Assembly: GCA_024137785.1 (NCBI GenBank) | Contig: JAHRHZ010000084.1 | Coordinates: 7,217,573 to 7,277,092, forward strand | DNA length: 59,520 bases | Direction: 5' to 3' | Source of the DNA: Ginglymostoma cirratum | Lineage: Eukaryota | In this document: positions 2,601-58,024 of the stretch, piece after piece | How the letters are laid out: every line of letters starts with the position of its first letter | Numbering within the stretch: the stretch's first letter is position 1 | Notes under the pieces: model-generated | The model's input: only the letters and a program-made list of their open reading frames with translations | What the model was told of the DNA's origin: nothing | The model's database searches: none | Position numbers and translations under genes: made by a program

Positions 2601-3008
2601 AATTTAAAGTTATTTTCATTTATTCACTGACGGAAAACGGGTAGCAAGGACTAGGCAAATAGTGCTCGTCAATCCTAATCGGTCTTGAGAAAGTGATGGT
2701 GAGTTGACTTCTTGAACTATTGCAGTCCATCTGGGGTTGGTGCACTCATAATGCTATGAGGAGAATGGTTTGATTAATTTGAAAAGCAAAAGTGAAACGA
2801 CCGTGGTAAAATTCCATGTCAGTATAGAAATGGTGACATCCCAAGGCATCTACTGCTCTTGCCCTCCTGGGTGCTAGACGTCATAACCTTACAAAACACC
2901 AGAAACTGATGAGAGGAAATTTCATGCCAGCTTTTATTTACAAGTTCAATTATCTCAAACAGTGAGTGACAATGTGCTAACAGGTAATATTAAACATTGA
3001 TTTCACAG

Positions 3009-3150
3009 ATTGAACAAAAAGGCGGAGATGACAAGTTGGCTTGTGCAACTTGAAGATTGCTGATTCCAAAAAAAACATCAAAACTGGTATAGCAAGACAA
3101 ATGTGCAGGATATGCAGATATAAAGCTGACAAGTGAGAAGCTGAGCATCC
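3009..3150 (+). pseudogene. Decayed copy of the terminal cytoplasmic exon of an upstream paralog of the V-C1 receptor gene
   Basis: The acceptor ttcacag|ATT matches ttcacag|ATC at 37677. Reads IEQKGGDDKLACAT*, then after a 1-nt deletion LKIADSKK, and after a 1-nt insertion TSKLV*QDKCAGYADIKLT, aligning to IKKGSGGNKVTHATLQIADSKKSSKPKLQDNSALYAEVKVT. The upstream intron is also homologous (aactgatgagaggaaatttca ~2904 vs aactgatgacaggaaatttca ~37571). Confidence 0.85.
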
Positions 3151-10547: not shown

Positions 10548-11190
10548 GACAGAGATAAAAGGTACTGCAGATGCTGGAGAATCCGAGATAACAAGCATGG
10601 GGCTGGATGAACACAGCAGGTCAAGCAGCATCATAGGAGCAGGAAAACTTGACGTTTCGGGCCTAAACCCTTCAAGGGTTTAGGCCCNNNNNNNNNNNNN
10701 NNNNNNNNNNNNNNNNNNNNNNNNNNNNNNNNNNNNNNNNNNNNNNNNNNNNNNNNNNNNNNNNNNNNNNNNNNNNNNNNNNNNNNNNNNNNNNNNNNNN
10801 NNNNNNNNNNNNNNNNNNNNNNNNNNNNNNNNNNNNNNNNNNNNNNNNNNNNNNNNNNNNNNNNNNNNNNNNNNNNNNNNNNNNNNNNNNNNNNNNNNNN
10901 NNNNNNNNNNNNNNNNNNNNNNNNNNNNNNNNNNNNNNNNNNNNNNNNNNNNNNNNNNNNNNNNNNNNNNNNNNNNNNNNNNNNNNNNNNNNNNNNNNNN
11001 NNNNNNNNNNNNNNNNNNNNNNNNNNNNNNNNNNNNNNNNNNNNNNNNNNNNNNNNNNNNNNNNNNNNNNNNNNNNNNNNNNNNNNNGGGCCTAAACCCT
11101 TCAAGGGTTTAGGCCCGAAACGTCAAGTTTTCCTGCTCCTATGATGCTGCTTGACCTGCTGTGTTCATCCAGCCCCATGCTTGTTATCAT
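10548..11190. mobile_element. Young Penelope-derived palindromic insertion spanning an assembly gap, with a 14-bp target-site duplication
   Basis: The arms are inverted copies, nearly identical to 47099-47226; TSD atcatctgtattat at 10534-10547 and 11186-11199. Confidence 0.85.
10688..11087. other. Assembly gap (400 N)
   Basis: Run of N. Confidence 0.99.
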
Positions 11191-14100: not shown

Positions 14101-14610
14101 TTGTAGATTTCCTTATGACCAACTTTCTACGACCAACTGTAGGTATTTGGTAACATAGGTGCTTGCTAGAACTGCTGCTCCTCAGGTGTACAATATTTGA
14201 TACTCTTGTAAATCAGTCTTAAGAGTTGGAATCCTTGCATAATTATGATTTCCCTCATGCTCTCAAGGTTTTCCTCTAACTTTAGTAAAAAAAAACTTCA
14301 ACATTGCAAATTCTTCACATATCTCATTAGTTTTCTTTACCATCACAATTAAATCTGCATTGATACCTTTAAGGCCAAGTTGTATGCATTTACAATTGCT
14401 ATTCAGTTTGACATTTCATTGTCTGCAGACTGCACCTTTTGCAAACTGACATTCGCGTTCGTAGTTGTACACGTCGAAAAATCCTATAACATTCAAGAGC
14501 AAACATCATTCAGTTCCTATATTTTCCGGGATATCTTCACAAATCAGGTTAAATAACATTTCACTCAATTGCCTGTAACAATAATTAACGTTTCAAACAA
14601 AAAACAATTT

Positions 14611-14750
14611 CAGTTCTGAAGAAGCGTCACTGGACCAGAAACGTTAACCACCTTTTTCTCCACAGATACTGCCAGAACTGCTGAAATTTTTCCAACAGTT
14701 TCTGCTTTTGTTTCTTATTTCCAACATCTGCAGCTCTTTGTTTTTATTCT
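14611..14750 (+). mobile_element. Penelope-derived short repeat with a decayed hammerhead core
   Basis: CTGAAGA-agcgtcactggacca-GAAA-CGTTA at 14616-14646, followed by the family tail (cacagatactgccagaactgctga...catctgcag). Confidence 0.65.
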
Positions 14751-26273: not shown

Positions 26274-26328
26274 ATGTTGGTGAGAGCAGTGGTTCCGTTC
26301 ATGGCTTTTCTGAGTTTGGCTTGGCAAG
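26274..26328 (+). CDS. SIRP-alpha-like V-C1 Ig receptor, exon 1 (signal peptide MLVRAVVPFMAFLSLAWQ)
   Basis: ATG at 26274, hydrophobic 18-aa leader, phase-1 donor CAAG|GTACTC; a 209-nt intron leads to the V exon. Confidence 0.8.
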
Positions 26329-26537
26329 GTACTCATAAACGTTACAAACTTCTCTTTTCTAATAACTTAGAATGTATTTCATATTTACAGATTCTATGCA
26401 TTGCAAAATTAGCTGCCCTGCTTTTCTAATTCGATGCACGTCATTGTTATCAATTGTTCTTGTATTTTATTCCTCCGTTGTTTTCCATGTCTGCTATCTA
26501 CAACTAGTACCATGGTTTTTACTCGTTTTTCTTTTAG

Positions 26538-26846
26538 TAGCCACGAAAGTAACTTCAAGTAAAGTAGATCAGTTTCCCAAAATCTTGAAGGCGGACAGAG
26601 GTGACAATGTTTCCATGTTCTGTACTTTTCCCATATTTGAAGATGTTCCTGAAGTATTTTGGTGGAGACGCAACGAGGAATCAATTCTGGAACCAGACAG
26701 CAGAATGCTTTTTCATGTCCAGAAAGGAAGTGGCACACTTCATGTTTTCAATGTCACTTTTCCAGACTCCGGAATGTATCATTGTAAAATAAAACATCAG
26801 CAAACGACTCTTCGAGCTGAAAGTGGATCATTGCTGACAGTGTGCG
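26538..26846 (+). CDS. Exon 2: V-set (VJ-type) Ig domain
   Basis: Polypyrimidine tract plus TAG acceptor; KVDQFP..GDNVSMFC..VFWWR..GTLHVFNVTFPDSGMYHC..ESGSLLTV has the canonical Cys, Trp, D-x-G-x-Y-x-C and a J-like G strand; phase-1 donor G|GTAAGA. Confidence 0.93.
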
Positions 26847-27046
26847 GTAAGAGACATTGCACCGGGTGCAGGCAAATTATGTGATCTAAGTTTTTTTAAT
26901 AATTAGATGAAAATCCAGTGATCGTGTATTCGCTTCTCACTGTTGGCTGGATCTCTTCCTCATTGAACTTGCTGTACAATGACCTTGATTTGCTTCACTC
27001 TTTATGTGCTATTTCTCAAGATCAATTCCACTACTGATTTTGATCA

Positions 27047-27245
27047 TGATGTGGAGGTGCCAGTGCTGGACTGACGTGCACAAGGTCAGAAATCACACGA
27101 CACCAGGTGATATTCTAACAGGTTTATTTGAAAAGACAAGCTTTTGGAGCCTCAGACTGAAGAAGGACTGAGGCTCCGAAAGCTTGTGACTTCAAATGAA
27201 CTTGTTGGACTTTCACCTGGTCTTGTGTGATTTCTGATATTGTCA
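27047..27245. mobile_element. Second Penelope-derived inverted-repeat family with a hammerhead core
   Basis: Inverted arms (tcagaaatcacacgacaccaggtga...tcacctggtcttgtgtgatttctga); core CTGAAGA-aGGA ctgaggc TCC-GAAA-GCTT at 27157-27185. Confidence 0.7.
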
Positions 27246-27379
27246 TCATGACATTCTACTGTGCTATTAATGTAATGAGTGTCTTTTTTTCCTGCAGCAA
27301 CAGTTGATATTGTGCCAAGAGAGTGAAACAGGATAATTGTTGAAATCTTGGGCGAAATTAGTTCGTAGAGTAAGATAAA

Positions 27380-27880
27380 ATAATGAACTGCAGATTCTGG
27401 AAATCTGAAACAAAGATAGAAATAGCTGGAGAAGCTCAACACATCTGGCAGTATCTGTCTGAGCTGACCTTTCGAGTCCAGCAATCCTTCTTCAGAATGG
27501 TTCTGCAGAAAGGCCACAGGACGCAAAATGTTAACTCACTTCTCCCTTCACAGATAGCCTCAAAATAAGAGGATGCAGTTTTAAGAATGAGTTGAGGAGG
27601 AGTCTCTTCGCACAAAGGGTTGTGAATCTTTGGAACTCTCTGCCCAGTGACGCAGTGGAGGCTACGGACCTCGTTGAATGTTTCAAGGCAAAGATAGATA
27701 GATTTTTGAACAGTAAAGAAGTTAAGTGTTATGATGAGCTAAGTTCACAATAAGATCAGCCATGATCTTATTCATTGGCAGGACAGGCTCCGGGGGGTCA
27801 GATGGCGTATGGTGCGAATATTTCCTATCTTTGAATTCTGTCAGATCTACTGAGTTTCTCCAGCAATTTCTATCTTTGTG
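27380..27880. mobile_element. Penelope-derived inverted repeat with a nested CR1 3' fragment (~27560-27830)
   Basis: The arm breaks at ...cacagat (27555) and resumes ..gtcagatctactgagtttctccagc (27840); the intervening sequence is the CR1 3' end (agggttgtgaatctttggaactctctgcc). Confidence 0.65.
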
Positions 27881-29649
27881 TCGTGGGGAAAATGTTCGAT
27901 TTACCTCTAACCAAAATAACCTTGCTAAGATGTGACAATGGAAATAATGTCAATAAAAAAGCAATGTATTTTGGATATTGAAAATTTGGAATGCTAACAG
28001 AAATTACTTGAAACGTGTCTGAGCACCTATACAGGTAAAACGTGCACAAGGATTAGCAACAAGAGTGGTGATTCGTCCATAAAGTTTACTCGGCCACTCA
28101 ATATAATTATAGCTGAACTGGTTGTGGTGTCAACCACAAGTTCCTGTCCACCTTGATACCCTTGGGCTTCCTCGTTAATCAAAAACACAATTCAGGTCAT
28201 AATCTTTCTTCAGAACATTTTTAATACCTCTTACATCAATTCTTTTGTACATGGTTGTATATAACACTCAATCAGCGCCTAAAATTTGCATTTATTTTAA
28301 ATTAAGGAAAATGATAATATACCACAGCCATCAATATTCAACAAACACAAAATAACTTTTCGACATCCAAATGGCCGATTAAAACATTCTGTAGCAAATA
28401 CTTCAAACTTTGAGATGGGTATCAAGGAAAATTAATACTAGGAATCAATGGAATGTAATAGAACTGGGCAAAAGGAGTTGAGAGACAGTTCAACCATAAC
28501 CAAAGTGAGTGGCGGAGTAAGTTCAAGGATGGTATTGGTTAGTGTTGTGGATGTACATTTTCCCAATACTCACATGCTTGAAAAGACATTTTTTAAAACA
28601 AACGAATCACATGATCCAGTGTGATGGCAAGTCTTGATCTTGGTGTCAATGCTTGATTCTATCCTAAAGCTTTCAGAGCACTGGAGTTACCCATTGGCTC
28701 TGATTGGCTCTCTGAAGTTCGCCAACTGGATATTTTCTGAAGCAGACAGAACAGGCAAACTGAATAAAGGACAGTACCAAGCATATCTAAAAGTGACTGT
28801 GCTCCTGCACTTGTAATTTATTATTTCAATGCAATGGGACATAACAGGAGACCAAGATGATTCTTTTTTTTCTCTACGAGAATTCTGTGACATCTGAAGC
28901 AGCTCCATGGGAAAAATAAAACTTTTCTCAGCCTTTTCTGGCAATAACAATTAGCATAAATTTGGAAGTGAATCAAATATCGAATTTAGTATTTCCCTCG
29001 TATTAAAAATTCAGGAGCAATAAATGGGTAGATAACAGAAATTAAGGTTATTGCTTGTAATAAACATCAGAACAATTATAATCCTCTAATATTTCTCCCA
29101 GATAAGCACTGAATGTAGATTGAGAGTGTATTAGTTCACTTGAGTAAATGGTTAATGTAGAATTGATATTTCAAAGAGCGTACTTTCAGGCCAAGAGGGA
29201 AATATGAATAGGGAACATAAATGACACAGCCATAATCTTATTGACGGTTGGATCAGACTCAAAGGGTCGAATTGCCTACTCTTTGGATGCCCTACTTCAG
29301 ATTCTTATGCATATGAAACCTCCAGGCAGAATCTGTTCCAGAAAAAAAAAAGTTCAATGAAGTGATTTTTCTTAGAGAAGGGTAAATGCCTGGGGTTACG
29401 TTACACCTGCACTTTATTACAGAATTTCTCCGCAGGTTCATCATTGTTGTGCATAGTTTGCAAAGCATTCCAACATTTTGCCATGAATTTCTTTAAAAAT
29501 ATAAACAAAGACCACGTTTAAAATACAATAACAACGAAAACTGTTGTCACATTAGGAATGGTACAGCATTAGTGTGGAAGGGGATGCATTGAAAAGCGTG
29601 AAAGAAGAGAGTGTAAGTTTTTTTTTAAATGTTTTACTTTATGTTATAG

Positions 29650-29946
29650 TTCCTCCGATCCTCCTGAAAATCATTCCCGTGGAAAGGATTTCAGGGAATA
29701 ATTTGACATTCAAGTGCAAAACGACTGCCTTTTACCCGGAGGATTTAGGAATCTCCTGGTTAAGAGATGGTGTCAAAATTCAGGCCGGAATAGAAACTGT
29801 GAAAAACAAGACCGTGGATGGTCTTTATGAAGTTACTAGTTCGTTGGAAGATGAACAGCCTGTGCAGGGCAGTGTAGTTTATACCTGCCTGGTATCTCAT
29901 GCCTGTCTTAAGGTGCCCGCCAGCGTCAGCTACATCTTCAATCGAG
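29650..29946 (+). CDS. Exon 3: C1-set Ig domain
   Basis: TATAG acceptor; LTFKCKTTAFYPEDLGISWLRDG..DGLYEVTSSL..YTCLVSH has the C1 hallmarks FYP, W and YxCxVxH; phase 1/1; donor G|GTAAGA. Confidence 0.95.
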
Positions 29947-30282
29947 GTAAGATTGAAAATGTTCCCTGAGGGAGTTTGGTATGTGAAGAAGGGTAAAATC
30001 CTAGATGTGTATTCTTCAGGCATTGAGCTAACTCTAATTCTAGAATATCGTGTAAATGTGAATGGAGTTCATTCTCAATGTCTCAGAAATTGAAACGAAG
30101 TAAAATATTCTTAGATGTCTTGCAGATGTAGGAGGCCGACTAGTTCGCTGTAATGACCTGAAACGGAAAGTTGATGTGAAAACTACTCAAAAGTTGAAAA
30201 CTCGACAGTTTTATTTTGCTAAATGAAATGAATGTAGCGCTAAAATTGATCCTTTTCACTCGAGTAACTTATGCAACTTGCA

Positions 30283-30530
30283 AAAAATGAAAGAACTGCG
30301 GATGCTGTAAATCAGGAAACAAAACAGAAATTGCTGGAGAAAACTCAACTGGTCCGGCAGCATCTGAGAAGGAAAAAACAGAGTTACCGTTTCGGGTCCA
30401 TTGACCCTTCCTCAGAACTTCCCACAGTTCTGAGGAAGGGTCACCAGACCCGAAACGTTAATTCTGTTTTGTTTTTCCTTCACAGATGCTACCAGATCTG
30501 CCGAGCTATTCCAGCCATTTCTGTTTTGTT
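30283..30530. mobile_element. Penelope-derived palindromic element with back-to-back hammerhead cores (intron 3)
   Basis: Inverted arms around a tcccac spacer; minus core at 30385-30415 and plus core CTGAGGA-aGGGTC acca GACCC-GAAA-CGTTA at 30430-30460. Confidence 0.8.
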
Positions 30531-31547
30531 GTGCAACTTGTCCATGTGTATCGTTTATACCACTCAGCTGATCTCTGCCAACAGCATCTTCAGTTGCCTG
30601 TAACCTACACTTGGAAAATACTAGCCTCCCGTTGTGTCTTTCCTTCTTTAAGGTGTCTCTTGAACCTTATTTCTCTCTGTCTTAAGATTACTTTGTGTAG
30701 AGTGGATAATGCTGTTTGAAGTGCCACAGAATTTTTAACTCGGTTAAAGGCCAGTTTGGTTGCAAGTTGTGCTTGTTATATATATTAAGAGTTGCAGGAG
30801 GTGGTTTCTGGGAAGACCGGAGAAATGTGTCATAAAGCATCCAAAATCCTTACAGATCTTGACAGTGTAAATGAGGAAAGTGTATTTCCGTTGGCGGCTG
30901 GTCTAAAACCAGAGAACACGGTTTCAAAACAAGGGGCGGGTCATTTAGGACTGAGGGGAAGAGGAATGTATTCATCCAGAATCTTTGGAATTCCCCACAC
31001 AGAATGCAGGGGAAATTCAGTCACTAAGAGTATGAAATATTGAGATCGACAGAGTTCCAAATGTTAAACGAAATGTAGACAGTGCGAGAAAATAGCGCTG
31101 ATGAAAAACACTCATAATCTAATTGAAAGACGGAGTGTGATCCACAGCCTCACTGCCTATTCCTGCTCCTGTTGTTTACCTTCCTTTGTAACCGTCGTTA
31201 GGGGATGTAAACTTTGCCCGATATTGCAGCTGTTGTGCATCAGTCTGGTTTAAGACAATGAGTAAACAAGTGCAAATTCCTTTACTCATAGCAAACAACG
31301 CTTCTACACAGAGAGAACTTTCCCACGCCCTTTAAGTCATCAAATGCGTTTTCTCAATCCAATGCATTATTGAGCTGAAGTTAATGTCTTCTGGTGCACG
31401 TTAAGGATCTTGTACAGGTGTCTCTTCTGAAATTAAATTGGTCCAACTTTTCCATCAGTGGGTTTATCCTGGGTGATGCCTTTGCAATTTATCATCGTGT
31501 GCTTTATGTTCTCCGCATGTAACTCACTGTGTTCCAAACTTGTTCAG

Positions 31548-31676
31548 TTCCATCAGGTGTTGATCCTGTAGGCGAAAGTATCACTGTTCCGATGATCATT
31601 GGTTGTGCAGGAGGAGCATTGGCAATGTTACTAATCATGATCATCTTCATGATACTCAAAGTGAAAGCATCGGCTG
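31548..31676 (+). CDS. Exon 4: stalk and transmembrane helix
   Basis: TTCAG acceptor (an alternative in-phase CAG ends at 31556); VPMIIGCAGGALAMLLIMIIFMIL followed by a KVK stop-transfer; no charged TM residue; phase-1 donor G|GTAAGA. Confidence 0.9.
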
Positions 31677-32277
31677 GTAAGAACCTTTCATATTTCGTTG
31701 TGTACTTTTTATTTCCTTAGACCCAGTGTAAAAAGCATTAAGAGCAGGAGAGGAATCAAGGACTGTGGCTTTAAATTGTGTAGTTGGACATGAAATGTAA
31801 ACATTTAACCTTCTTATTCGAACTGGACACTCGGTTTGTTCACCACCACGTTGCTCCGGTCGAAATTACAAGTGTTCTGTATTATTGATTAGTGCGGATC
31901 CAGGTCCTAAAGAAGAAACCTTTTTTTTTAGAAGCTAGATGTTGGCATTTGGCATTAATGTGGGTGTATTCGAACGGACAACTAGATATGCACATCCTCA
32001 GATTTTATTTCCATTGTAATTTGTGGTATATATGTGCCACGGACTTGCATTTTGCACTGTCACATAGAAACTAACTCTGCTTCATTGGGTGCTTTGCAAC
32101 TTGAGCAGTGAACAGGCAAAACACAAAGTACTACACTCAGTGCAGCTGAATACCTTCAAACTGTGGTTTTCTGTACTATGCATATAAATTAAATGTTTCG
32201 AACAGCGAAGGCATGACATTGGATTTGGTGATACTTTGATTCTATCATTAACAGTGCATTACTTTGCTTTGTATTAG

Positions 32278-32321
32278 GCAACAAGAGAAATTCGATGGAA
32301 GTGGGTCAAAATGACGAACCG
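32278..32321 (+). CDS. Exon 5: short cytoplasmic exon (GNKRNSMEVGQNDEP)
   Basis: ctttgtattAG acceptor and CCG|GTAGGG donor; phase 1 to 0 bridges the TM exon to exon 6 exactly. Confidence 0.75.
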
Positions 32322-33264
32322 GTAGGGTGACAATATTCTTTCAATTCCAAACAAAAATCGTAAAGGATGTGGGCACATAGAATGGATAGCAGTAAATTTT
32401 ACATTCGGTTGAAATTACTTAAATTTCATAGAACATATAATTCTATAGCCCAGGATGAAAAGCTCACACCTCTGCCACCTTTAAGAGGTAGTAAGTCGAT
32501 TTGTTCCACGCTCGTGTTTTACCTGTACATCTCATTTTTCACGCCAATCCAATCCTCTTTTTGAAATTTCCTATCGAACCTCTTCCTGTCACTGTCTCAG
32601 TTGATGGGCAGCTCACTGCAACTGTCTGCAGAGAGAAACAAACAAAACTCTCCACATATTATTTACTAATAATACCGACTGTGTGTCACCTGGATCTGAA
32701 TCAACTAATCTATGAAAATAATGTCTCCTCATATACTTCATCACAGACTCTCAACTTAAACACTTACGTTAAACCTTCCCTTAAATGTACTTGATCTAAG
32801 TAAAATAATTATTTCCAGTCTCCGGAATATCATTGAAATCTCTGAAAGCTGGGACCTTTCCAGGAAATATCTGTTACATCCTTTCAAAGAACTAGACATC
32901 CTCCTGACGTGGTGCCTGGAGTGGGGCACAATATCTCAGGTCTTTTATGTGCTGTATTCCTTTGTTAGCAGTTCTGGGAGCAGAGAGTATGAGTGGGGTG
33001 GGTTAAAATCGAAATAGCGGCTGTGGAAGTGTTGGGAGATAGTTTTGCCAAGAATATAATTGTTGCACGCCATTTAGAGGACGTACGTTTCCAGAAATGT
33101 ATTGAGAACAGCCTAAGGCTTTGCTACCAGATCTCGTAATAGATTACGCTAACTATGGAATAAGAAAACTTCCATCACTACAACAGTGTCAAAAAGAGCT
33201 AGACATAAATGAGAAAATACTAAATGCCTGCTGTCCATCAGCAAGATGTTAAAATGTAGTTCAT

Positions 33265-33600
33265 TTTATTTTATTCATTTACAGGATGAGGGCATTGCTG
33301 GGTAGGCAGCATTTATTGCCCATCGCTAATTGCCCTTAAGAATCAACCACAGTGTTGTGGGTCTGGATTCACTTGTAGGCCAGACCAGGTGACAATGGCA
33401 GTTTGCTTCCCTAAAGGACATTAGTGAACCAGATGGGTTTTTGTTCTGACAACGGATTCACGTGAAATTCTTAATTCTAGATATTTATTGAATGCAAATT
33501 CCACCCTCTGCTGTGGTGGGATCTGAACCCAGATCCCCAAAACATGATCTAGGTCTCTAGATTAACAGCCCAGCAATAATGCCACTAGGCCATTGCTCCT
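33265..33600 (-). mobile_element. tRNA-derived shark SINE (intron 5)
   Basis: Colinear with 20075-20417. Confidence 0.8.
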
Positions 33601-33809
33601 CCGCCCTGCGTTTCATATTTAAGACATAACTCCTGACTACAATGGTGAGATATTAGGTGCAAATCACTGAGCGTTGACAGGGTGCCATTGCGACATTGTT
33701 TCATTGACTCCTGCCTGAATATTAACTGTCTCGCATTCAGTTACAGTTGGTCGTGGCTGGCTGCATAATTAAGCTTTCTGCTATCAATATTTCTTATCTT
33801 ATATTCTAG

Positions 33810-33920
33810 CTTAGACAAGAACCAACTGAAGAAAATTTCGCCTATGCTCCTGTAAACTTAAAAGCCAAAAAGGATTCTGCTAAACACAGGCACAAGGAAG
33901 AACATGCTGTCTATTCCCAG
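33810..33920 (+). CDS. Exon 6: cytoplasmic, motifs FAYAPV and AVYSQ(I/V)
   Basis: ttctAG acceptor; LRQEPTEENFAYAPVNLKAKKDSAKHRHKEEHAVYSQ; donor CAG|GTAAAA, where read-through gives VK* with the stop at 33927-33929. Confidence 0.85.
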
Positions 33921-34574
33921 GTAAAATGAAATAGTTGTCAAATATGCAACATCCATGTCACTCTCATACGAGGGCAATATAGTGAAGATGGAGTCCATTT
34001 TTTTAAAAAAAGACATTGTAAAATAGAAAGGGAAAGGGGTGTTCTAATCTTGACTCGATGAAAGAGAATATGTGGCAGTTATCCAGATGCCACCGTTGAT
34101 AATATGAGGACATCGGTTCAAATCTCACCTCGGGCAGCTAATAGAACTAAATTGAGTCGATGAATCTGGACTGTCAGGTTAATTTCAATAAATGTTGATC
34201 ATGCGAATTGTAATTAATTGTTATCAAAAAAAAACTTCCCTGTTTCACTTGTGCAGAGGATTGGCGAGACAAATTCTGGAGCATTATGCACAATACTGGT
34301 CACCTTTCTCATGGAAAGGTATTAATACATTGAATGTGACTCAGAGAAGGTTTACTGGACTAATACCTGAAATGAGCATATTCCCTTATGTGACGTTATG
34401 ACGATAAGACACGGTCTTCAGGGAAGGAAGCTTGCCATCCTTACCTGGCCCATGTTTCATGTAAATCCACAATCACGGCGATGTGGTTGATTCTCAACTG
34501 CTGTCTGCGCAATTAGGAATGTGCAATGAACATTGGCCTAGCCATTGATGCTCACATACTGTGAATGAATTAAC

Positions 34575-36110
34575 AGAAAAAGAAGTAAGCCATTTCGACC
34601 AGGGAATCTGCTTCACCATCCAATGAGGTCAAGCTCGATCTGACAAACTTCCATTTTCCTTCCTCTTCCCTGTAACATTTTATTCCTTTCCTCATTAAAA
34701 ATCTGTTTTAGCTTTGAACATTCTTAATAGCCCAACCTAGGCAGCTTTTGTGGAACATAATTTCACATATTCACTGCCCTCCAAGAGAAAAAATTCCTTC
34801 TCATCTCAATTTTAAATATGCAACCACTTATTCTGGGATTATGCCCTCTGGCCCAGGACTCTGATATGGGGAAACAAACACTCCTCATCGATCCAGTTAA
34901 GTCCCCTAAGAATCTTTTTTATGTTTCAATCAGGTGTCATTCTTCTAAATTCCAATGAATACAGGCCCAGCCTACTCAACCTCTCTTCCTTCTTACCTTC
35001 TTTACCAATGAATTTCTCTGGACATTCTGCAATCCCAGTATATCTTTTCTGATATCGGGGAAGAAAACAGTTCGCAGTGTTTCATATATAGCCTAACACG
35101 AGACTTGCACGGTTTTGGCAAATATCCCTTTTTTAATATTCCATTCTCATTGAAAGCAAGGCCAGTATTCCATTTGCCTTCTCGGTTACCTGCTGTAATT
35201 AGGTGCTAGCTGTTTGTGATTCATGCATGAGGACTCCAAAATCCCTCTGCTACGTAGATTTCTGCTGTCTTTCTGCACTTAAATAATACTCAGCTCTTCT
35301 ATTCCTTTTCTCAAAGTGCTTAACCTCACATTTCCCCACATTATACTCCATGTGCCAAATCCTTGCCCATCCTCGTAACTGGGCTACATCCCTTTAAAGA
35401 TTTTTCTGTCACCCTCACCACTCATCATCCTACCTACTTTAATTTTAACCAAATACTTGGGACACTGCATGTGAATTTTCCACATTCAAGTCTTCAATAT
35501 TTATATTTGGCAAATTTGTGGTCCTACCACTAATTCCTATGGCATTCCATGAGATCTAGATTTCCATTCTGAAAATTCCCTCCGTTCCCTCATCCAAAAC
35601 TCGTAGTATTCTATTACCTCACCAGTTGTCTGTCCATTTAATGTACTACTCCCACAACCACAGTTTTTTTTAATCTTATTAAGTGACCTAGTATGTGGTT
35701 CCTCTGCAAATGTTTTCTGAAAATACAGATATATTATATATACCGTTTCTCATTTATCTGCCTTCCTCTGACCTCCTGAAAGAATTTCTGGAAGATTGCT
35801 ACTGCTGCATCCACTACACGAGCTACTTCTCTAGATATCCTTGGATACATCCCATCAGATCCAGGGGACTTATTTGTCTTATGCCCCACTAGTTTCCCAG
35901 ATGTTTCTTCTCCAGTGATAGCGATTGTGTTTAATTCCTCTCCCCCATTTGCCCTTGAATATTTAATAATTTGAAATTCTGTTAGTGTTTTCTACTGTCA
36001 CAATTGATGTAAAGTATTCATTCAAGTCTTCTACCATTCCCTGGTTCCCCATTGTTCATTTTCACGCCTCCTTCTCTTTTGGGGCCTTTGTTCATTTTGA
36101 CTTCTCTCTT
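34575..36110 (-). mobile_element. Decayed CR1 LINE (intron 6)
   Basis: CR1 3' end and RT remnants, similar to 43335-44340 (gagaaaaaattccttctcatctc, ttccattctcattgaaagcaaggccagtattccatttgcc). Confidence 0.65.
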
Positions 36111-36134
36111 CCGTTTTAAAAACTATACAATAAC

Positions 36135-36560
36135 TAACAGGTATGTATCCTCTGGAGTTTAAAAGGTTAGAGGTGACTTAATTGAGACATATGAGTTCCT
36201 GACAGACCAGGTGCATGTGAAAGGTTCTTTCTTTTTGTGTAAGAATCTAAAATTAGAGGACATAGTTTCAAAATAAGGCATTGTCTATTAAGGTAGTGCT
36301 GAGGACATTTTTTTTCTCTCTCTCATAGGGTTGTATGTCGTTAAAATTCCCTTCCTCCAACAGCAGTATATGCAGAATCTTTAAATGTGTTTTAAGGCAG
36401 TGGTAGATAAATTCTCCATTACAAAGTGGTTACTGTATTATGGGCGGATTTAGGAATGTAGAGTTGAACTTAAAATCAGGTCAGCAAGGAGCTTATTCAA
36501 TGATGGTGCAGACTTGAAGTGCCGAGTGTCTTGATCTTGCTCCTTGTTTGCATGTTGGTA
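36135..36560 (+). mobile_element. CR1 LINE 3' fragment
   Basis: ctctggagtttaaaaggttagaggtgacttaattgagacatat (SLE..RLRGDLIETY) plus a CR1 3' UTR. Confidence 0.7.
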
Positions 36561-37677
36561 ATGTCCTTTTGGGAAGAAAATCTGCTGCTCTTACCTGGCC
36601 TGGCCGACGTGTGCCACTCGACTCTCAGCCTTGTGATTGATGTTTAGCGATGATTAATATTTGATATAGCCAAACAAGACACTCTGTACAAGACAGTTAG
36701 TAACGGGCAGCAGCTGCTGATATTGTCACTGCCTTCTTTATGCCATGAAAACAAAAGGCAAAATCATGCCACTGTTCAGGAATCGATATCTCTTCTTCTG
36801 ATTTGTTCGGAAATAGAAATCAGGGGAAATATCAAACGGGCAGCGGGCTCTTACCATCAGTTTTAGACTGGAATTCCAACAAAACTATCCGTATTTCATT
36901 TTATGGATTAGCACTAAGAATGATGGTCCCTATATAAACACAACTATATAAACTCAACTGGGAAGTGTGGCAAATATCAATTTTACAGAAAATGTACGGC
37001 ACCAAGAACAATCTGCTTTACACCTATTCTGCTGAATCCAGCAGCAGAACAAATAACAAACCAGACAGGCAAAGCAGATTACTATCTATAGCCAAGCACA
37101 GCTATATCTTCAACGTTGTTTGGTACTACACTAAAACGCAGGGAATTGAAAGATCTGAGGTTTAACCTATTAACTGTACTGGGCGACCATCTCAGCCAAG
37201 GCTGACCATATTCACCCTGGGTCCAAGAGTTCTGAAAATCAGCAGTGGTGGGGTAAAGGAGGTTGAAATGTGTGACTTAAGGCCTCTCCCTGGGATAAGC
37301 AGATCTAAACGACTGTCAGGGGTCAGAAATTGAGCCTTGAAAGGGATGTTTCACAATATCAGAAATCAAAACACATCTAACACGCCTTCATTTGATTCCT
37401 TTGCTATTTTAATTGAAGTAATAACCTGCATTTTAAAATGCACAATGCTGATATTCTAACCTATTTCACAAGAAGTTTAAAGCAGAATACAATTTTTAGG
37501 CAGGCCTGTAGAGTGCCGAGAAATCACAGATAGAAGACGGTACTAAACTCGGTCACAATGTGAAGTTGGTAACTGATGACAGGAAATTTCACCAAAGCCT
37601 ATTTAATAAAATATTGACTACGTCTAGCAATGACTTGATGATGGCCTAATGGGTGATGTTAAATTTTACATTCACAG

Positions 37678-37818
37678 ATCAAGAAAGGAAGCGGAGGTAA
37701 CAAAGTGACTCACGCCACTCTGCAAATAGCTGATTCCAAGAAATCATCAAAACCCAAACTACAAGACAATTCCGCATTATATGCAGAAGTAAAGGTGACA
37801 AAGAAAATGAGAGGCTGA
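37678..37818 (+). CDS. Exon 7: terminal cytoplasmic exon, motifs VTHATL and ALYAEV
   Basis: ttcacAG acceptor, phase 0; IKKGSGGNKVTHATLQIADSKKSSKPKLQDNSALYAEVKVTKKMRG*; TGA at 37816-37818; paralogous copy at 3009. Confidence 0.82.
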   Translation: MKKGSGGNKVTHATLQIADSKKSSKPKLQDNSALYAEVKVTKKMRG

Positions 37819-37944: not shown

Positions 37945-38185
37945 GAAAGAATTATCTGGAATAGGTCAGCAGTTCTCGCAGCATCTGTGAAGAAAAAAAT
38001 CAGAGTTTCACGTCCAATGATTCTTTCTCAAAACTCATTTCCTCAGTTCTGAGGAAGGGTCACTGGACCCGAAATGTTAACTCTGATTATTTCTTCACAG
38101 ATGCTGCCAGACCTGATGAGATTTTCCATCCACTTCTGCTTTTGTTCCTGATTTACAGCATCAACAGTTCTTTCAGTTTCTTTTT
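37945..38185. mobile_element. Penelope-derived inverted repeat in the putative 3' UTR, with a hammerhead core
   Basis: CTGAGGA-aGGGTC actg GACCC-GAAA-TGTTA at 38049-38079; a decayed inverted arm lies upstream. Confidence 0.75.
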
Positions 38186-52035: not shown

Positions 52036-52479
52036 GTAAGTCGGAACAGGAATAAAAGTGTTATGCTTAGACGTGAAAAACCCGTCAATTACTGCGATTT
52101 CATGAGGTAAATAATTGAACTGACTAATCATTCGTCAACAATGAAATTGCCAATCGGAATTCACTTCAGATCAAGCTGAAGTCAATAGGAATTCCACCTC
52201 TGTCTTGCAATATTACAGATCTCACAGCTATGAGTAGTGTGTAATGGACTATTTATTATGAAACTTTCAGAACTCTGCCCCTAATTAGTTAGAGGGTTAG
52301 GTCACCTTGCGTTTCCGAGCACCACCTGTCACCTCAAGGGTTATTGTAGTGCAGTAAACAGTGTCCCTACTTTTGTACCAACAGATCTAATATAATTCAA
52401 GTTGTTCTTCTTACATATCCTAAAGGTTGCTGTCAGTGTTGTCTCGGAAAGCTGTAGGACAGTGTCGTAAAGCATTTAA

Positions 52480-53335
52480 AAATCCTTAGAAATCTCCACA
52501 GGATAAATGAGGAAAGGATGTTTCTCCTGGCTGATGGTCTAGAACCAGAGAACGCAGTTATAAGACAAGATGCAGGTCATTAGAACTGAGGTTACGAGGA
52601 ATTTCTTTAAGCAGAGGGTGGTGAATCTTTTGAATTCTCCAGCCTAGACTGCTGAGAAAACTCAGTCACAGACAGTATAAACTACTGAGATCGACAAAGT
52701 TCCAGAGGTTAAATGATATATAGATAGTGTGGGAAAATACCGCTGAGGAAGATCAATCATGATCTATTTGAAAGCTGGAGCATGCTCCAGGGTCCCAATA
52801 TCTACCCCTGTTCCTGCTGTTTATGATCCTTAGCAGCCGTGGTTTGCGGTTGAAAGCTTTGCCAATCATGCAGCTGTCGTCCATTAGTCTATTTTAAGGT
52901 AAATGAGTGCAAATTCCTTTACGCATAGAAAACAACCCTCCTAAGCAGAGAAAAGTCTGTTACGCATTTAAGTCATGAAATACGTTTCCTCCATAGCTGC
53001 AGTTGATGTCCTCTGATTTTCATTAAGGGCCTTGTACAGCTATTCCTACCGAAATTAAAACGGTACATCTTGGCTAAGTAAGTAGAGAGCTGAATGAACA
53101 CAACAGGTCAAGCAGCATCAGAGGAGTAGGAAGCCTTCCGGCTCCTCTGATGCTACTTGGCCTGCTGTGTTCATCCAGCTCTACACCTTGTTATCTCAGA
53201 TTTTCCAGCATCTGCAGTTCCTACTATCTCTGAAACAACTTGGCTAAATGCGGGTTTATCCTGAGAGACACTATTGTAAGTTATCATCCAGTGCTTAATG
53301 CTCTAAGCACATGACTCGCTGTGTTCCACACTTTG
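52480..53335 (+). repeat. Paralogous copy of the 3' part of intron 3 (30840-31545) of the intact gene
   Basis: Colinear matches, e.g. gtgcaaattcctttac.catag.aaacaac, cttgtacag, gaaattaaa, gggtttatcctg, ctgtgttcca.act. Confidence 0.9.
53078..53238. mobile_element. Penelope-derived hairpin insertion with a 9-bp TSD
   Basis: TSD cttggctaa at 53069-53077 and 53239-53247; inverted arms; absent from the paralogous site at ~31445. Confidence 0.85.
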
Positions 53336-55740: not shown

Positions 55741-58024
55741 AGACTGGAAAGAATATGAGTAGCTGTCAAGTGTCTTGTAGATGGAAGACACTGTTGCCAT
55801 GTCAATGAGTGGTGGGGTTGGTGAACATTTGCGGTGGTGAATTAGGTTCAAAACAAGAGTGCTTCTTTTCCCCAGATCACATCCAGTTTGTAGTGTGTTG
55901 CTGGGTACGGATTCTTTCAGGCAAGTGGTGAATTTTTCATCACACTTCTGAATTCTGCCCTGTAGACACTGGACAGATTTTGAGGACTTACTAGGCTGCA
56001 GAATTCCTAACCTCTGTCTTAGTCAAGTATATGATAGGTTGAGTCATTTTCTTGTCGACGTACCCCCAGCATGTTGTGGGAAATCCAGCAATGAGATATC
56101 AGTGAATGTCAAGGAAGATAGCTTGATTCTCTTTTGTTGGAAATGGTCATAGCCTGGTACATGCGTGTTGTAAATGTTATGTGTAACTTATCAGCTTAAA
56201 ATAGAATTGTGCTTTGGTTTTCCTGCATTTGGTCATGAATTATTTCATTTTCTGAGGAGTTTCAAATGGTGCTGAAGATTCTGCAATTATCAGTGAACAT
56301 GCACATTGTTGACTTTATGTCGGAGGCAAGATCACAAAGAAGCAGACATGGTGTTTGGGAGTGGGCATTGCCCTGCTGTTACATGGTAACATCCAGTAAT
56401 GATATAATTGACATCCAGAAAATAAATCTTCCTTTGTGTGAGATATAGTGGTGGCAGGTACTAACCACTTCCATCACCTCCGACTGACCCTCTCCCCATC
56501 CTACCTTATTCCCATTGACTCCAGTTTCTCTAGGGCTCCTTAACAGCATACTCGGTCGAACACTCCATTAATGTTAAGGGCAGAAACTTTCGCTTCACGT
56601 CTGGTGTTCAGCTCTTCTTTCGGTGCTTGAAGCAATGCTGTAGTACTTCCAGAAGTTCCTACACTGTAGCTGGTTCAAATTTCTGCAATGCCCTCCCTAA
56701 CAGTATTTTTAATCGACCAACATCACACACAATGCAACAATTCAGAAGGCAGATCACCACCACTTTCTCAAGCGCATCCGAGGATGGATAATAAACAATG
56801 GACAGCCAGTGGCATCGACATCACACAAGTGAGCAAACAAAGACGTAAAGAATCTCAATTCCAACCTCCGTGAGCAGATTACGTTTGTGCAAATTTCACC
56901 TGATAGCACTGTTCATGAAATCTCATCTCTTTGCGAAAACCAAAGAGTAGGGCGTTAATTGCTCATATCTTCTTTGAGTTGCTTTTTTATGGAGACTGCA
57001 TACCTAGGTCACTTTTTACATTTCTCTGTTGACGTAAGTTTTGTAGATTAGCAGATAATTCTTGCCTAGAGGGCCTGCATCGTTAAGGGAAACACGTCAA
57101 CAGTGTTGCTGCAAGGATGTTGTCAAGGCAAAAGCCTTTTCAGTAGCAAACATAGCACACACCTCAAACAACTGATATCCTCACAGCCTGTTCATACGAA
57201 GTGCTGTCTCACCTCCAGTGATGGATATCATGAGATCCTTATGATTTTTGAAGGAAAAATCGTTGTGAGAATAACAGATTCATATGCAAAGTAGAAGGCT
57301 AGCAAGTGCTGGGGTTCATTGAAGGCGTATATTTGAGGTGGACAATCTTCATGACCAAACTTCGGCCATGAAGTCGCTCCTTCAGAACAAGTTTGCAACC
57401 AAGTGGAATAGCATCCGATTTATTGCACTATAACCTATGTCAGAAGAAGCGTGAACTCGCATTCACAGCTATTGCGAATGCACATAATATAACATCCACG
57501 ACTGCGCTGTTAACTATTTCACTTGTCATGTCTTCAGCATTTATGTTTCCTAAAGCACCAAAGTCCTCAGTCAATTCCTGGGGATAGAACCATGAAGAGA
57601 AGCTGGAAGCATTACTCACATTTTGCTGGGGGGTAGGGGTTGTTGGCAAAGGAGGATGGTGGTCTGTTGAAGTGTGTGCAAGAGAGGCAACACTACCCCC
57701 CACCCCTCACCCCGACCAGGGACAAAGACTCAGGATATAGACAGGATTCAGGCATGTTGTGGACTTTTATTCAAGCAAAATCTGGTTAATGCAGGGAGAG
57801 GACCAAAGGATTTTCCACAATTCTGGCTTAGACATGAAACACAATCATTCCCTTCATCTTCGGATCAAACTGGAAGAGGGATCAATGACACAATCTTATT
57901 TTACAGTAAAAACATGTATTTTTAAGTTTTTTCATACATTTTGTGTTATAATATTCATACACGACATGTTTATTGTGCCCTCTTCTTCCCTTCAACGGGA
58001 CCAATCCCATAAAACACTTGATCA

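What the first reader, a model, noticed from the sequence alone, without database searches (positions are those of the whole stretch)
26274..37818. Intact non-rearranging VJ-C1-TM inhibitory receptor gene (SIRP-alpha-like, antigen-receptor-like ectodomain) in a shark
Seen: seven exons with GT-AG junctions and consistent phases (1,1,1,1,0,0) splice to 1086 nt, or 361 aa, giving leader, V with a germline-joined J-like strand (ESGSLLTV), C1, uncharged TM and a tail with FAYAPV, AVYSQI, VTHATL and ALYAEV. Established: C1-set domains occur mainly in Ig/TCR/MHC/B2M, tapasin, SIRPs and some B7/nectin relatives, and a V+C1 ectodomain is the layout of a TCR or Ig light chain; mammalian SIRP-alpha is V-C1-C1 with four tail tyrosines. 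Inference: a cartilaginous-fish inhibitory receptor family resembling the proposed pre-RAG antigen-receptor ancestor. Orthology to SIRPA is not established here.
Basis: partly seen in the sequence, partly recalled or inferred. Interest (0 to 1): 0.78.

Follow-up and report, generated by a model that had tools for sequence, protein, structure and literature searches.

The report
Shark SIRP-like V-C1 receptor gene
This is a real, intact shark gene for a cell-surface immune receptor with one variable-like and one constant-type antibody domain and a SIRP-style tyrosine tail; it is one more, somewhat worn, member of a large family that annotation pipelines already predict in sharks, rays and chimaeras.

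Summary
The seven-exon model holds. All six introns are GT-AG, the phases are 1,1,1,1,0,0, the exon lengths sum to 1086 nt, and no whole codon is a stop. Every exon matches predicted proteins of cartilaginous fishes in the same order. One public contig joins exon 4 to the 44-nt exon 5.

The gene belongs to a family seen only in cartilaginous fishes: 31 of 31 and 42 of 42 hits. NCBI names its members inconsistently, most often "SIRP-alpha-like". This scan has already met the family many times elsewhere in this genome.

- **J-like strand:** it has lost the family's invariant first glycine (23 of 23 relatives keep it).
- **VTHATL:** it has no tyrosine (19 of 19 relatives have Tyr there), so three tail tyrosines remain.
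- **ITIM fit:** none of the three meets the strict consensus at position -2.

The "V" is short, with no room for a C'' strand. The first tyrosine pair keeps the spacing and flanks of the SHP-2-binding pair of human SIRP-alpha.

Most likely this is an inhibitory-type member of a paired-receptor cluster. It is not a SIRPA orthologue. It is a new member of a known kind, of moderate interest.

The parts
26274..26328 (+). Exon 1: ATG and signal peptide (MLVRAVVPFMAFLSLAWQ), phase-1 donor AAG|gtactc
   Evidence: Read; splice sites. It aligns to family leaders such as P0155.
26538..26846 (+). Exon 2: N-terminal Ig domain, a short V-type frame. Cys-Cys spacing is 54 aa. It ends in a J-like G strand, AESGSLLTV, in which the family's first GxG glycine is Glu (GAA, 26819-26821). 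An extra Cys lies at 26843-26845. There are two N-glycosylation sequons.
   Evidence: Ig_3 2.2e-09, I-set 1.5e-08, V-set 1.6e-08; tblastn E down to 5.6e-39. Conserved columns.
29650..29946 (+). Exon 3: C1-set domain (FYPEDLGISW ... YTCLVSH). The hinge reads VPPILL where the family has VPPTPL. An extra Cys lies in the presumed F-G loop (TGT, 29904-29906).
   Evidence: C1-set 1.9e-10, 41.4 bits; best single stretches are IgM constant (47 bits) and SIRP-gamma d3 (40.7 bits). E 1.6e-39.
31548..31676 (+). Exon 4: stalk plus an uncharged transmembrane segment (ITVPMIIGCAGGALAMLLIMIIFMIL, about 31580-31657) and a KVK stop-transfer
   Evidence: Read. E 5.5e-06 to P0166. Contig record 15 of run X8 covers 31571-31675.
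32278..32321 (+). Exon 5: 44-nt juxtamembrane exon (G)NKRNSMEVGQNDEP, which moves the phase from 1 to 0
   Evidence: Candidate list; read; joint 31675/6 to 32277/8 (GT..AG), and the contig piece ends exactly at 32321. It aligns to the family's GSKKDSAEAGQAEEQ.
33810..33920 (+). Exon 6: first tyrosine pair. FAYAPV lies at 33837-33854 and AVYSQ at 33906-33920; the pair is completed by Ile, the first codon of exon 7. The two tyrosines are 23 residues apart.
   Evidence: E 1.5e-05 to P0155. Tail alignment. SIRP-alpha peptide with 24-residue spacing.
37678..37818 (+). Exon 7: second unit. VTHATL (37705-37722) has His where the family has Tyr. ALYAEV lies at 37774-37791. The stop TGA is at 37816-37818.
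   Evidence: E 6.4e-12 to P0155; 19 of 19 family tails have Tyr at the His position; exon 6 against exon 7 scores 33; 58 of 5000 shuffles reach it.
2904..3149 (+). Decayed copy of exon 7 with about 100 nt of its upstream intron. It has two in-frame stops and a 5-nt gap. It lies behind the upstream paralogue, whose V, C1 and TM exons are outside this window.
   Evidence: E 3.1e-04. Read. Alignment; 67.7% identity over 254 nt. P0164 hit at 2994-3128.

Best explanation
The locus is an intact, at least partly transcribed gene for a type I membrane receptor. It belongs to the SIRP-like V-C1 family of cartilaginous fishes.

**Shown.**
- It has seven exons: a signal peptide, a short V-type Ig domain with a J-like last strand, one C1-set domain, an uncharged transmembrane helix and a 107-residue tail.
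- It does not rearrange.
- It sits in a cluster next to a decayed copy of its own last exon.

**Inferred mechanism.**
- The ectodomain binds an unknown ligand.
- Src-family kinases then phosphorylate the first tyrosine pair (FAYAPV and AVYSQI, 23 residues apart).
- That pair docks the tandem SH2 domains of SHP-1 or SHP-2, as the matching pair of SIRP-alpha does.
- This dampens signalling from activating relatives that have a charged transmembrane residue.

This copy is a divergent member. It has lost the first glycine of the J core and the tyrosine of the family's one canonical ITIM. Any inhibitory output would therefore rest on three non-canonical YxxV/I motifs.
For: **Gene model.**
- Splice sites, phases and the open frame check out.
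- Family proteins match in the same order, including exons 1 and 5.
- One 241-nt contig of run X8 joins exon 4 to exon 5 at GT..AG with 0 other letters, and its piece ends at the predicted end of exon 5.

**Constraint.**
- 34 of 39 conserved family columns are kept, including both disulfide pairs, Trp, D-x-G-x-Y-x-C and YTCxVxH.
- In a neutral simulation the frame stays open in 1.0% of 5000 runs at 0.10 changes per site and 0.12% at 0.15.
- The exon-7 relic has two stops in 46 codons.

**Family.**
- 31 of 31 and 42 of 42 hits are from cartilaginous fishes.
- Some relatives have long tyrosine tails. Others have short tails with Arg and Asp in the TM, such as P0032, P0152 and P0168. That is the pattern of paired receptors.

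**SIRP likeness.**
- The family profile scores human SIRP-alpha at 92.7-96.6 bits, matching in order across V and C1.
- The SIRP-alpha peptide printed in PMC5589908 has its two tyrosines 24 residues apart, with YA.LNL and H..Y..I flanks. Here the spacing is 23, with YA.VNL and H..Y..I.
- The TM has no charged residue.
Against: - **Expression:** there is no read depth over exons 2 and 3 in any of the four runs laid. One of these is a poly(A) RNA run, of which about 24 in 100 reads were read. The only spliced evidence is one low-depth contig (3.4) in a run whose RNA label is a guess.
- **ITIM fit:** 0 of 3 tyrosines fit the strict ITIM consensus at -2 (F, A, A).
- **Lost ITIM:** the family's canonical ITIM has His for Tyr here; 19 of 19 relatives keep Tyr.
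- **Other departures:** the invariant J-core Gly is Glu (23 of 23 relatives have Gly), the hinge PPTPL is PPILL, and the WWKxG glycine is Asn.
- **Branch lengths:** the terminal branches are long, 0.31 against a median of 0.21 for V and 0.38 against 0.12 for C1.
- **V domain:** profiles of the V domain alone do not list SIRP d1 among the best 60 solved chains. Single V-C stretches of Ig light chains score 62-65 bits, so the ectodomain is no closer to SIRP than to light chains.
- **Not measured:** no ligand, phosphorylation or SHP binding was or could be tested.
Confidence: 0.6

Rival explanations
1. The copy is drifting. The frame is still open, but the gene is no longer under selection for its original job and is little expressed. 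It would be a young pseudogene in a birth-and-death cluster.
For: Five of 39 conserved family columns are changed, two of them at hallmark positions: the J-core Gly and the hinge. The canonical ITIM tyrosine is lost. Terminal branches are long. There is no depth over exons 2 and 3 in four runs. Decayed family pieces lie nearby: the relic at 2904-3149, and earlier unchecked notes of broken copies.
Against: All 357 whole codons are open and all 12 splice sites are canonical. Neutral drift at 0.10 changes per site or more keeps the frame open in at most 1% of runs. The Ig-fold core residues of both domains are intact. A spliced exon 4-5 contig exists. Motif 2 has Ile at +3, a better SH2 fit than the family's Thr.
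Confidence: 0.2
2. The tail works mainly through something other than SHP phosphatases, for example as YxxPhi endocytosis signals or by docking other SH2 proteins. The receptor would then be an uptake, adhesion or switch receptor rather than a plain inhibitor.
For: All three tyrosines read YxxV/I, which also fits the general YxxPhi sorting pattern (established knowledge). None has the ITIM -2 residue.
Against: The two-tyrosine unit, with its 23-residue spacing and flanks, matches the SHP-2-binding pair of SIRP-alpha. It is conserved across the family from chimaera to sharks.
Confidence: 0.1
3. It is the shark orthologue of SIRPA, and binds CD47.
For: NCBI pipelines name 11 of 31 relatives SIRP-alpha-like. 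Human SIRP-alpha is the best solved chain that is neither an Ig/Fab chain, UrIg2 nor titin for the whole-family profile. The tail units are alike.
Against: There is one C1 domain, not two. The family has many copies in species-specific clusters, and the C1 exon has no starred partner. SIRP d1 is not among the best 60 chains for the V-only profiles. The pipeline names are inconsistent: NCR3LG1-like, tapasin-related, Ig-lambda-like and TCR-beta-like also occur.
Confidence: 0.05

Closest known systems
Mammalian SIRP family (SIRP-alpha inhibitory, SIRP-beta activating)
   Same: - Both are non-rearranging, with V followed by C1.
- The tail is built of two two-tyrosine units. The tyrosines of a unit are 23 residues apart here and 24 in the SIRP-alpha peptide of PMC5589908 (passage).
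- ITYADL/LTYADL-type and TEYASI-type motifs are present (passages).
- Relatives with a short tail and a charged TM residue give inhibitory/activating pairs.
- The whole-family profile scores SIRP-alpha at 92.7-96.6 bits.
   Different: - There is one C1 domain instead of two.
- The V is about 16 residues shorter over V plus C1 (187 profile positions against 203 residues) and leaves no room for a C'' strand.
- SIRP d1 is not among the best 60 chains for the V-only profiles.
- The family has many copies that cluster by species.
- The ligand is unknown.
- In this gene the third tyrosine is His.
Ig light chains and TCR chains (rearranging antigen receptors)
   Same: - The ectodomain is V-J-C1.
- The family's J core, GxG(S/T)xLxV, aligns to the FGTGTKVTV of a lambda chain.
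- The C1 domain has the FYP..W and YxCxVxH hallmarks.
- Light chains score 62-65 bits in a single V-C stretch. TCR V-alpha and V-beta score about 41 bits with the V profile.
   Different: - V and J are one germline exon, with no RSS heptamer nearby.
- The protein has its own TM and tyrosine tail.
- Phe of FGXG is Asn or Asp in the family.
- In this gene the first Gly is Glu.
UrIg / UrIg2 (non-rearranging shark antibody-like genes; PMC12227049, passages seen)
   Same: Both are shark genes with a germline-joined VJ exon followed by C1-type domains. UrIg2 (9dmx) is the second-best solved chain for this C1 exon (E 3.7e-16 over three stretches) and for the family profiles.
   Different: UrIg2 is V-C1-C2-C3 and forms antibody-like homodimers (abstract). 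This gene has two Ig domains, a TM and a signalling tail. The high UrIg2 score is the sum of three C domains; its single V-C stretch scores 48.6 bits.
PRARP genes of chicken and other non-mammals, and teleost NITRs (recalled; for PRARP I saw only a one-line mention and a reference entry)
   Same: As I recall them, both are non-rearranging receptors with a J-like V domain. PRARPs have V-C1-TM, and many NITRs have ITIM tails.
   Different: I could not test this. No PRARP or NITR sequence was available from any tool, and the PRARP paper is not in the held library. NITRs, as I recall, lack a C1 domain.

Membership tests
SIRP-like V-C1 receptor family of cartilaginous fishes (pipeline-predicted; most often named 'tyrosine-protein phosphatase non-receptor type substrate 1-like') | Leader, V, C1, TM and tail exons that match family proteins in the same order | tested here: met
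   tblastn of 15 family proteins hits exons 2, 3, 4, 6 and 7 in order. Exons 1 and 5 align as added fragments.
SIRP-like V-C1 receptor family of cartilaginous fishes (pipeline-predicted; most often named 'tyrosine-protein phosphatase non-receptor type substrate 1-like') | Conserved family columns (at least 85% of 23 relatives) | tested here: met
   34 of the 39 columns that carry a residue of this gene agree. The 5 that differ are G to N, G to E (J core), T to I, P to L (hinge) and A to T.
SIRP-like V-C1 receptor family of cartilaginous fishes (pipeline-predicted; most often named 'tyrosine-protein phosphatase non-receptor type substrate 1-like') | Tail order AYxxLNL ... VYxQ ... LTYAxL ... 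YAEV | tested here: met
   The order and spacing are kept. The third motif has His for Tyr, whereas 19 of 19 aligned family tails have Tyr.
SIRP-alpha (orthologue) | Three Ig domains, V-C1-C1 | tested here: not met
   There is only one C1 exon between V and TM. No second C1-like hit appears anywhere in the window.
SIRP-alpha (orthologue) | Tail with two pairs of tyrosines that bind SHP-1/2 | tested here: inconclusive
   The first pair is kept, with 23-residue spacing against 24 in the peptide of PMC5589908. The second pair has lost its first tyrosine. I made no statistical comparison, because the human peptide is not a stored sequence. Binding is not testable here.
SIRP-alpha (orthologue) | Shared gene neighbours or one-to-one phylogeny | tested here: inconclusive
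   The window holds no other recognisable gene besides repeats, so synteny is untested. The trees hold only family members. They show species-specific clusters and no outgroup SIRPs.
Rearranging Ig/TCR genes | Separate V and J segments flanked by RSS | tested here: not met
   The exon runs unbroken from V through the J-like strand to a GT donor. No CACAGTG or CACTGTG lies between 26000 and 30000.
VJ-type V domain | G-strand core GxG(T/S)xLxV | tested here: not met
   This gene reads E-S-G-S-L-L-T-V. The first Gly is invariant in 23 of 23 relatives and nearly invariant in A2 and A6.
V-set Ig domain | Full V frame, including the C'-C'' strands | tested here: inconclusive
   Pfam V-set scores 35.2 bits (cut-off 26) but covers only residues 59-101; I-set scores 35.0 bits over 8-88. 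All 13 of 13 family V domains pass both models, with the best E for V-set at 2.5e-15. The cysteines are 54 aa apart, and Ig V domains need 7- to 17-residue insertions to align.
C1-set Ig domain | Pfam C1-set above its cut-off, with the FYP..W and YxCxVxH hallmarks | tested here: met
   41.4 bits against a cut-off of 21, E 1.9e-10. The best solved matches are Ig constant domains, UrIg2 and SIRP-gamma d3.
ITIM-bearing inhibitory receptors | (S/I/V/L)xYxx(I/V/L) in the tail | tested here: not met
   Read directly: FAYAPV, AVYSQI and ALYAEV. The -2 residues are F, A and A (0 of 3 fit). The +3 residues are V, I and V (3 of 3 fit).
ITIM-bearing inhibitory receptors | Uncharged transmembrane segment | tested here: met
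   The 26-residue hydrophobic stretch contains no K, R, D or E. Short-tailed relatives carry R and D there.
UrIg / UrIg2 | V followed by three C domains, antibody-like | tested here: not met
   This gene has two Ig exons only. The UrIg2 layout is taken from the entry title and the abstract.

The most novel reading that the evidence does not exclude
The V-C1 family, this gene included, keeps the ancestral two-domain, single-exon VJ-C1 layout with a paired-tyrosine tail. The SIRPs of bony vertebrates would have arisen from it by duplicating the C1 domain. The family would stand beside the stock that the RAG transposon split into rearranging receptors. On this reading the SHP-binding two-tyrosine unit and the inhibitory/activating pairing both predate the split of cartilaginous and bony vertebrates.
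Probability: 0.15. Interest if true: 0.75.

Novelty: new member of a known kind. Interest (0 to 1): 0.42.

Why it matters
C1-set domains are almost confined to antigen receptors, MHC molecules and their close partners. SIRPs have been proposed as relatives of the antigen-receptor precursor (Hatherley 2009, PMC2785349, passages). [quoted passage not shown]

A family of V(J)-C1 receptors with SIRP-style tails and activating partners, present throughout the cartilaginous fishes, places this receptor type at the base of the jawed vertebrates. It also offers a simpler two-domain form to compare with UrIg, NKp30, light chains and TCRs.

This particular gene adds one intact copy to that family. It also shows how such copies wear: the J-core glycine and the canonical ITIM tyrosine are lost, and a relic tail exon lies behind the neighbouring paralogue. 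The gene is useful for annotation and for choosing family members to express. It is not a surprise in its own right.

Tried and rejected
1. **V-NAR link.** A four-sequence profile of this gene's closest V exons ranked shark V-NAR domains as the best single-domain V-type hits (4hgk_C at 42 bits; TCR V-alpha at about 31.7). With a broader 13-sequence family V profile, V-NAR dropped out of the best 60 and TCR V-alpha/beta (about 41 bits) and PD-L1 V took its place. I reject any special kinship to IgNAR V. The earlier result probably reflects the shared short frame without C''.

2. **Second relic near 53 kb.** Positions 30763-31541 resemble 52398-53333 at 72-77%, but the likeness stops at the acceptor of exon 4. 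I take it for a repeat, not a second TM exon.

3. **Relics of exons 5 and 6 behind the upstream paralogue.** I found none in the first 6 kb by motif scan or sensitive blastn.

4. **Poly(A) signal.** The first AATAAA on the + strand after the stop is at 39358. That is too far to assign, so I make no claim.

5. **Same-gene protein fragments in public data.** The V exon found only P0012, at 62% identity. The length window of 56-178 aa makes this blank uninformative.

6. **Relatives outside cartilaginous fishes.** None appeared. Those searches need shared 5-residue words and did not even pick up human SIRP-alpha, which the profile scores at over 90 bits in PDB. The blank therefore does not show absence.

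7. **Literature.** Searches listed no paper describing SIRP-like V-C1 receptors of cartilaginous fish. The PRARP paper (J Immunol 2019) is not held. Supplements were closed and may hold gene lists that bear on this.

8. **Structure.** No fold prediction and no fold search could be done.

9. **Species.** I did not check this. In my V tree the exon groups with Scyliorhinus canicula proteins.

Full report
**What is there.** I read the stretch exon by exon and never joined the exons. The stated length is a sum of exon lengths, and every search used single exons or database proteins.
- The seven exons are 26274-26328, 26538-26846, 29650-29946, 31548-31676, 32278-32321, 33810-33920 and 37678-37818.
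- All six introns are GT-AG. The phases are 1,1,1,1,0,0. The lengths sum to 1086 nt. None of the 357 whole codons is a stop.
- The 44-nt exon 5 was the only uncertain part. Among 83 frame-compatible AG...GT candidates between exons 4 and 6, the one at 32278-32321 has a good pyrimidine tract.
- Its peptide aligns to the juxtamembrane segment of relatives. It is also the one that a public contig uses (next section).

**Transcript evidence.** The look-up of sequencing runs listed no holder on record as RNA. I laid four runs on 26400-32399.
- In run X8, kept as contigs with an RNA label that is only a guess, a 241-nt contig (record 15, depth 3.4, 0 other letters) covers 31571-31675. It then skips 601 nt with GT..AG ends to 32277-32321 and stops exactly at the predicted end of exon 5.
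- Its remaining 91 letters lie outside the stretch I laid. That fits exon 6, but I did not show it.
- Exons 2 and 3 had zero depth in all four runs. One of these, X4, is a poly(A) RNA run of which about 24 in 100 reads were read.
- Depth in X4, X1 and X8 sat on intronic repeats at 27000-27999 and 30200-30599.
- The gene is therefore spliced at least at junction 4-5. Full-length expression is not shown.

**Domains.**
- Exon 3 is a C1-set domain: Pfam 41.4 bits against a cut-off of 21. Its best solved matches are Ig constant domains, UrIg2 and SIRP-gamma d3. The best single stretches are IgM constant at 47 bits and SIRP-gamma at 40.7 bits.
- Exon 2 is an Ig domain that Pfam cannot assign. Ig_3, I-set and V-set all score E of about 1e-8 to 1e-9. 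V-set covers only the last 43 residues, while I-set covers residues 8-88.
- Its cysteines are 54 residues apart. In profile alignments a lambda V domain needs a 7-residue insertion after the C' strand, and a VH needs 17.
- The domain is thus a short V-type frame with no room for a C'' strand, ending in a J-like strand.
- All 13 of 13 family V domains pass both the V-set model (best E 2.5e-15) and the I-set model.
- Exon 4 carries a 26-residue hydrophobic segment with no charged residue, followed by KVK.

**The family.**
- A full scan of 1.84 billion representatives with the V exon gave mostly giant multi-Ig proteins. It also gave a set of 130-410-aa proteins at 33-62% identity.
- These and their relatives are V-C1-TM proteins of sharks, rays and the chimaera Callorhinchus.
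- A word-indexed search with one of them found 31 proteins, all 31 from cartilaginous fishes. A 23-sequence profile found 42, again all from cartilaginous fishes. These blanks outside the group are weak, because the tool needs shared 5-residue words.
- NCBI's names for the 31 are inconsistent:

| NCBI name | Count (of 31) |
|---|---|
| SIRP-alpha-like ("PTPNS1-like") | 11 |
| SIRP-beta-1-like | 1 |
| NCR3 ligand 1-like | 7 |
| Tapasin-related-like | 3 |
| TCR-beta-like | 2 |
| Ig-lambda-like | 1 |
| Unnamed | 6 |

- Some members have long tyrosine tails. Others, such as P0032, P0152 and P0168, have short tails and Arg and Asp in the TM. That is the paired inhibitory/activating pattern.
- Earlier notes of this scan report many such genes elsewhere in this genome, including an Arg-TM gene just upstream of my window. 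I used these as leads only.

**How this copy differs from its relatives.**
- Against 23 hand-picked full-length relatives, 34 of 39 conserved columns agree.
- The five that differ include the first Gly of the J core GxG(S/T)xLxV. It is Gly in 23 of 23 relatives and Glu here (AESGSLLTV). They also include the hinge VPPTPL, which reads VPPILL here.
- In the tail, the motif LTYAxL carries Tyr in 19 of 19 aligned relatives and His here (VTHATL). That motif is the family's one canonical ITIM.
- The three remaining tyrosines (FAYAPV, AVYSQI, ALYAEV) have F, A and A at -2, so none fits the strict ITIM. All three have V or I at +3.
- Motif 2 has Ile at +3 where the relatives have Thr.
- In trees of 43 of the 61 family proteins I had fetched (isoforms and fragments left out by hand), the V exon sits in a starred set of 5 rows. 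The other four are three Scyliorhinus canicula proteins and P0012. Its end branch is 0.31 against a median of 0.21 (44 rows).
- The C1 tree dropped 5 rows that lack a C1 domain. There the exon sits in a starred clade of 21 rows with no closer starred partner. Its end branch is 0.38 against a median of 0.12 (39 rows).
- Sequences cluster by species, and inhibitory and Arg-TM forms are mixed. This speaks for birth-and-death evolution rather than one-to-one orthology.

**Working or decaying?**
- In a neutral simulation on the 357 whole codons, the frame stays open in 9.5% of 5000 runs at 0.05 changes per site, 1.0% at 0.10 and 0.12% at 0.15.
- The window offers an internal contrast. A copy of exon 7 with about 100 nt of its intron lies at 2904-3149, at 67.7% identity over 254 nt. 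It has two in-frame stops and a 5-nt gap.
- The open frame, the intact fold core and the spliced contig favour a gene that is, or was until recently, under constraint.
- The lost hallmark residues, the long branches and the silence of exons 2 and 3 keep the drifting-copy rival alive, at about 0.2.

**Likely mechanism.**
- Exon 6 and exon 7 each encode one two-motif unit with the same 23-residue spacing. They align without gaps at a score of 33, against a shuffle mean of 21.1 (sd 4.1); 58 of 5000 shuffles reach that score.
- The SIRP-alpha-derived peptide printed in PMC5589908 was used there to engage and activate SHP-2 (one passage seen). Its two tyrosines are 24 residues apart, with YADLNL and HTEYASI flanks. 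The exon-6 unit here reads YAPVNL ... HAVYSQI.
- PMC5413580 (passages) gives ITYADL and LTYADL as the conserved SIRP-alpha ITIMs and TEYASI as ITSM-like.
- I infer that the first unit, once phosphorylated, docks the tandem SH2 domains of SHP-1 or SHP-2, and that the receptor opposes activating relatives.
- Phosphorylation, SHP binding and the ligand are all inferred.

**Comparison with known families.**
- The whole-family profiles score human SIRP-alpha at 92.7-96.6 bits, matching in order over V and C1. SIRP-gamma scores 82.9-85.4 bits.
- Single V-C stretches of light chains score 62-65 bits, and UrIg2 scores 48.6 bits plus two further C domains.
- V-only profiles do not list SIRP d1 among the best 60 chains.
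- The ectodomain is therefore about as close to light chains as to SIRPs. The SIRP label rests on the tail, the lack of rearrangement and the pairing.
- The gene is not a SIRPA orthologue, since it has one C1 domain. It is not a rearranging receptor: V-J is one exon, and no RSS heptamer lies between 26000 and 30000. It is not a UrIg, which has four Ig domains.
- Hatherley 2009 (PMC2785349, passages) proposed SIRPs as relatives of the antigen-receptor precursor. The current published candidates are UrIg and UrIg2 (PMC12227049, abstract and passages; PMC10751288, passages).
- PRARPs and NITRs are recalled only and were not tested.

**Verdict.** The gene is a new, somewhat divergent member of a pipeline-predicted family of cartilaginous fishes, SIRP-like in its workings. 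I found that family described in none of the papers listed by my searches (supplements closed). This scan had already met the family on other DNA of the same genome.

Noticed in passing
window 2904-3149 (+): A decayed copy of exon 7 with part of its upstream intron: 67.7% identity over 254 nt, two in-frame stops and a 5-nt gap. It probably marks the lost inhibitory tail of the upstream Arg-TM paralogue. No relics of exons 5 or 6 lie in the first 6 kb.
   Followed up: partly
window 26843-26845 and 29904-29906: This gene has two extra cysteines. One is the last residue of the V exon (LTVC); most relatives have Y, F, L or H there. The other is in the presumed F-G loop of C1 (SHACLK; relatives have S). 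Both would lie near the V-C1 hinge, so they might pair or make an interchain bond.
   Followed up: no
window 27000-27999 and 30200-30599: Intronic interspersed repeats show very high depth in the RNA and contig runs, with many variant letters and loose ends. Copies lie elsewhere in the window, near 900, 4250-4410, 14610-14740 and 38040-38185.
   Followed up: no
window 30763-31541 and 52398-53333: About 780 nt just upstream of exon 4 recur 21 kb downstream at 72-77% identity. The likeness ends at the exon-4 acceptor. This could be a repeat or a relic intron without its exon.
   Followed up: partly
window 58022-59332 (-): Two long overlapping ORFs lie on the minus strand (436 aa and 263 aa, Pro/Ser-rich, one with a Cys-rich block). 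They look like a retroelement remnant. I did not search them.
   Followed up: no
window 26540-26845 (V exon) against solved structures: For this gene's own V exon and its three closest V-only relatives, shark V-NAR domains are the best single-domain V-type matches. The effect vanishes with a broader family profile.
   Followed up: yes
window 10688-11087: A run of 400 N.
   Followed up: no
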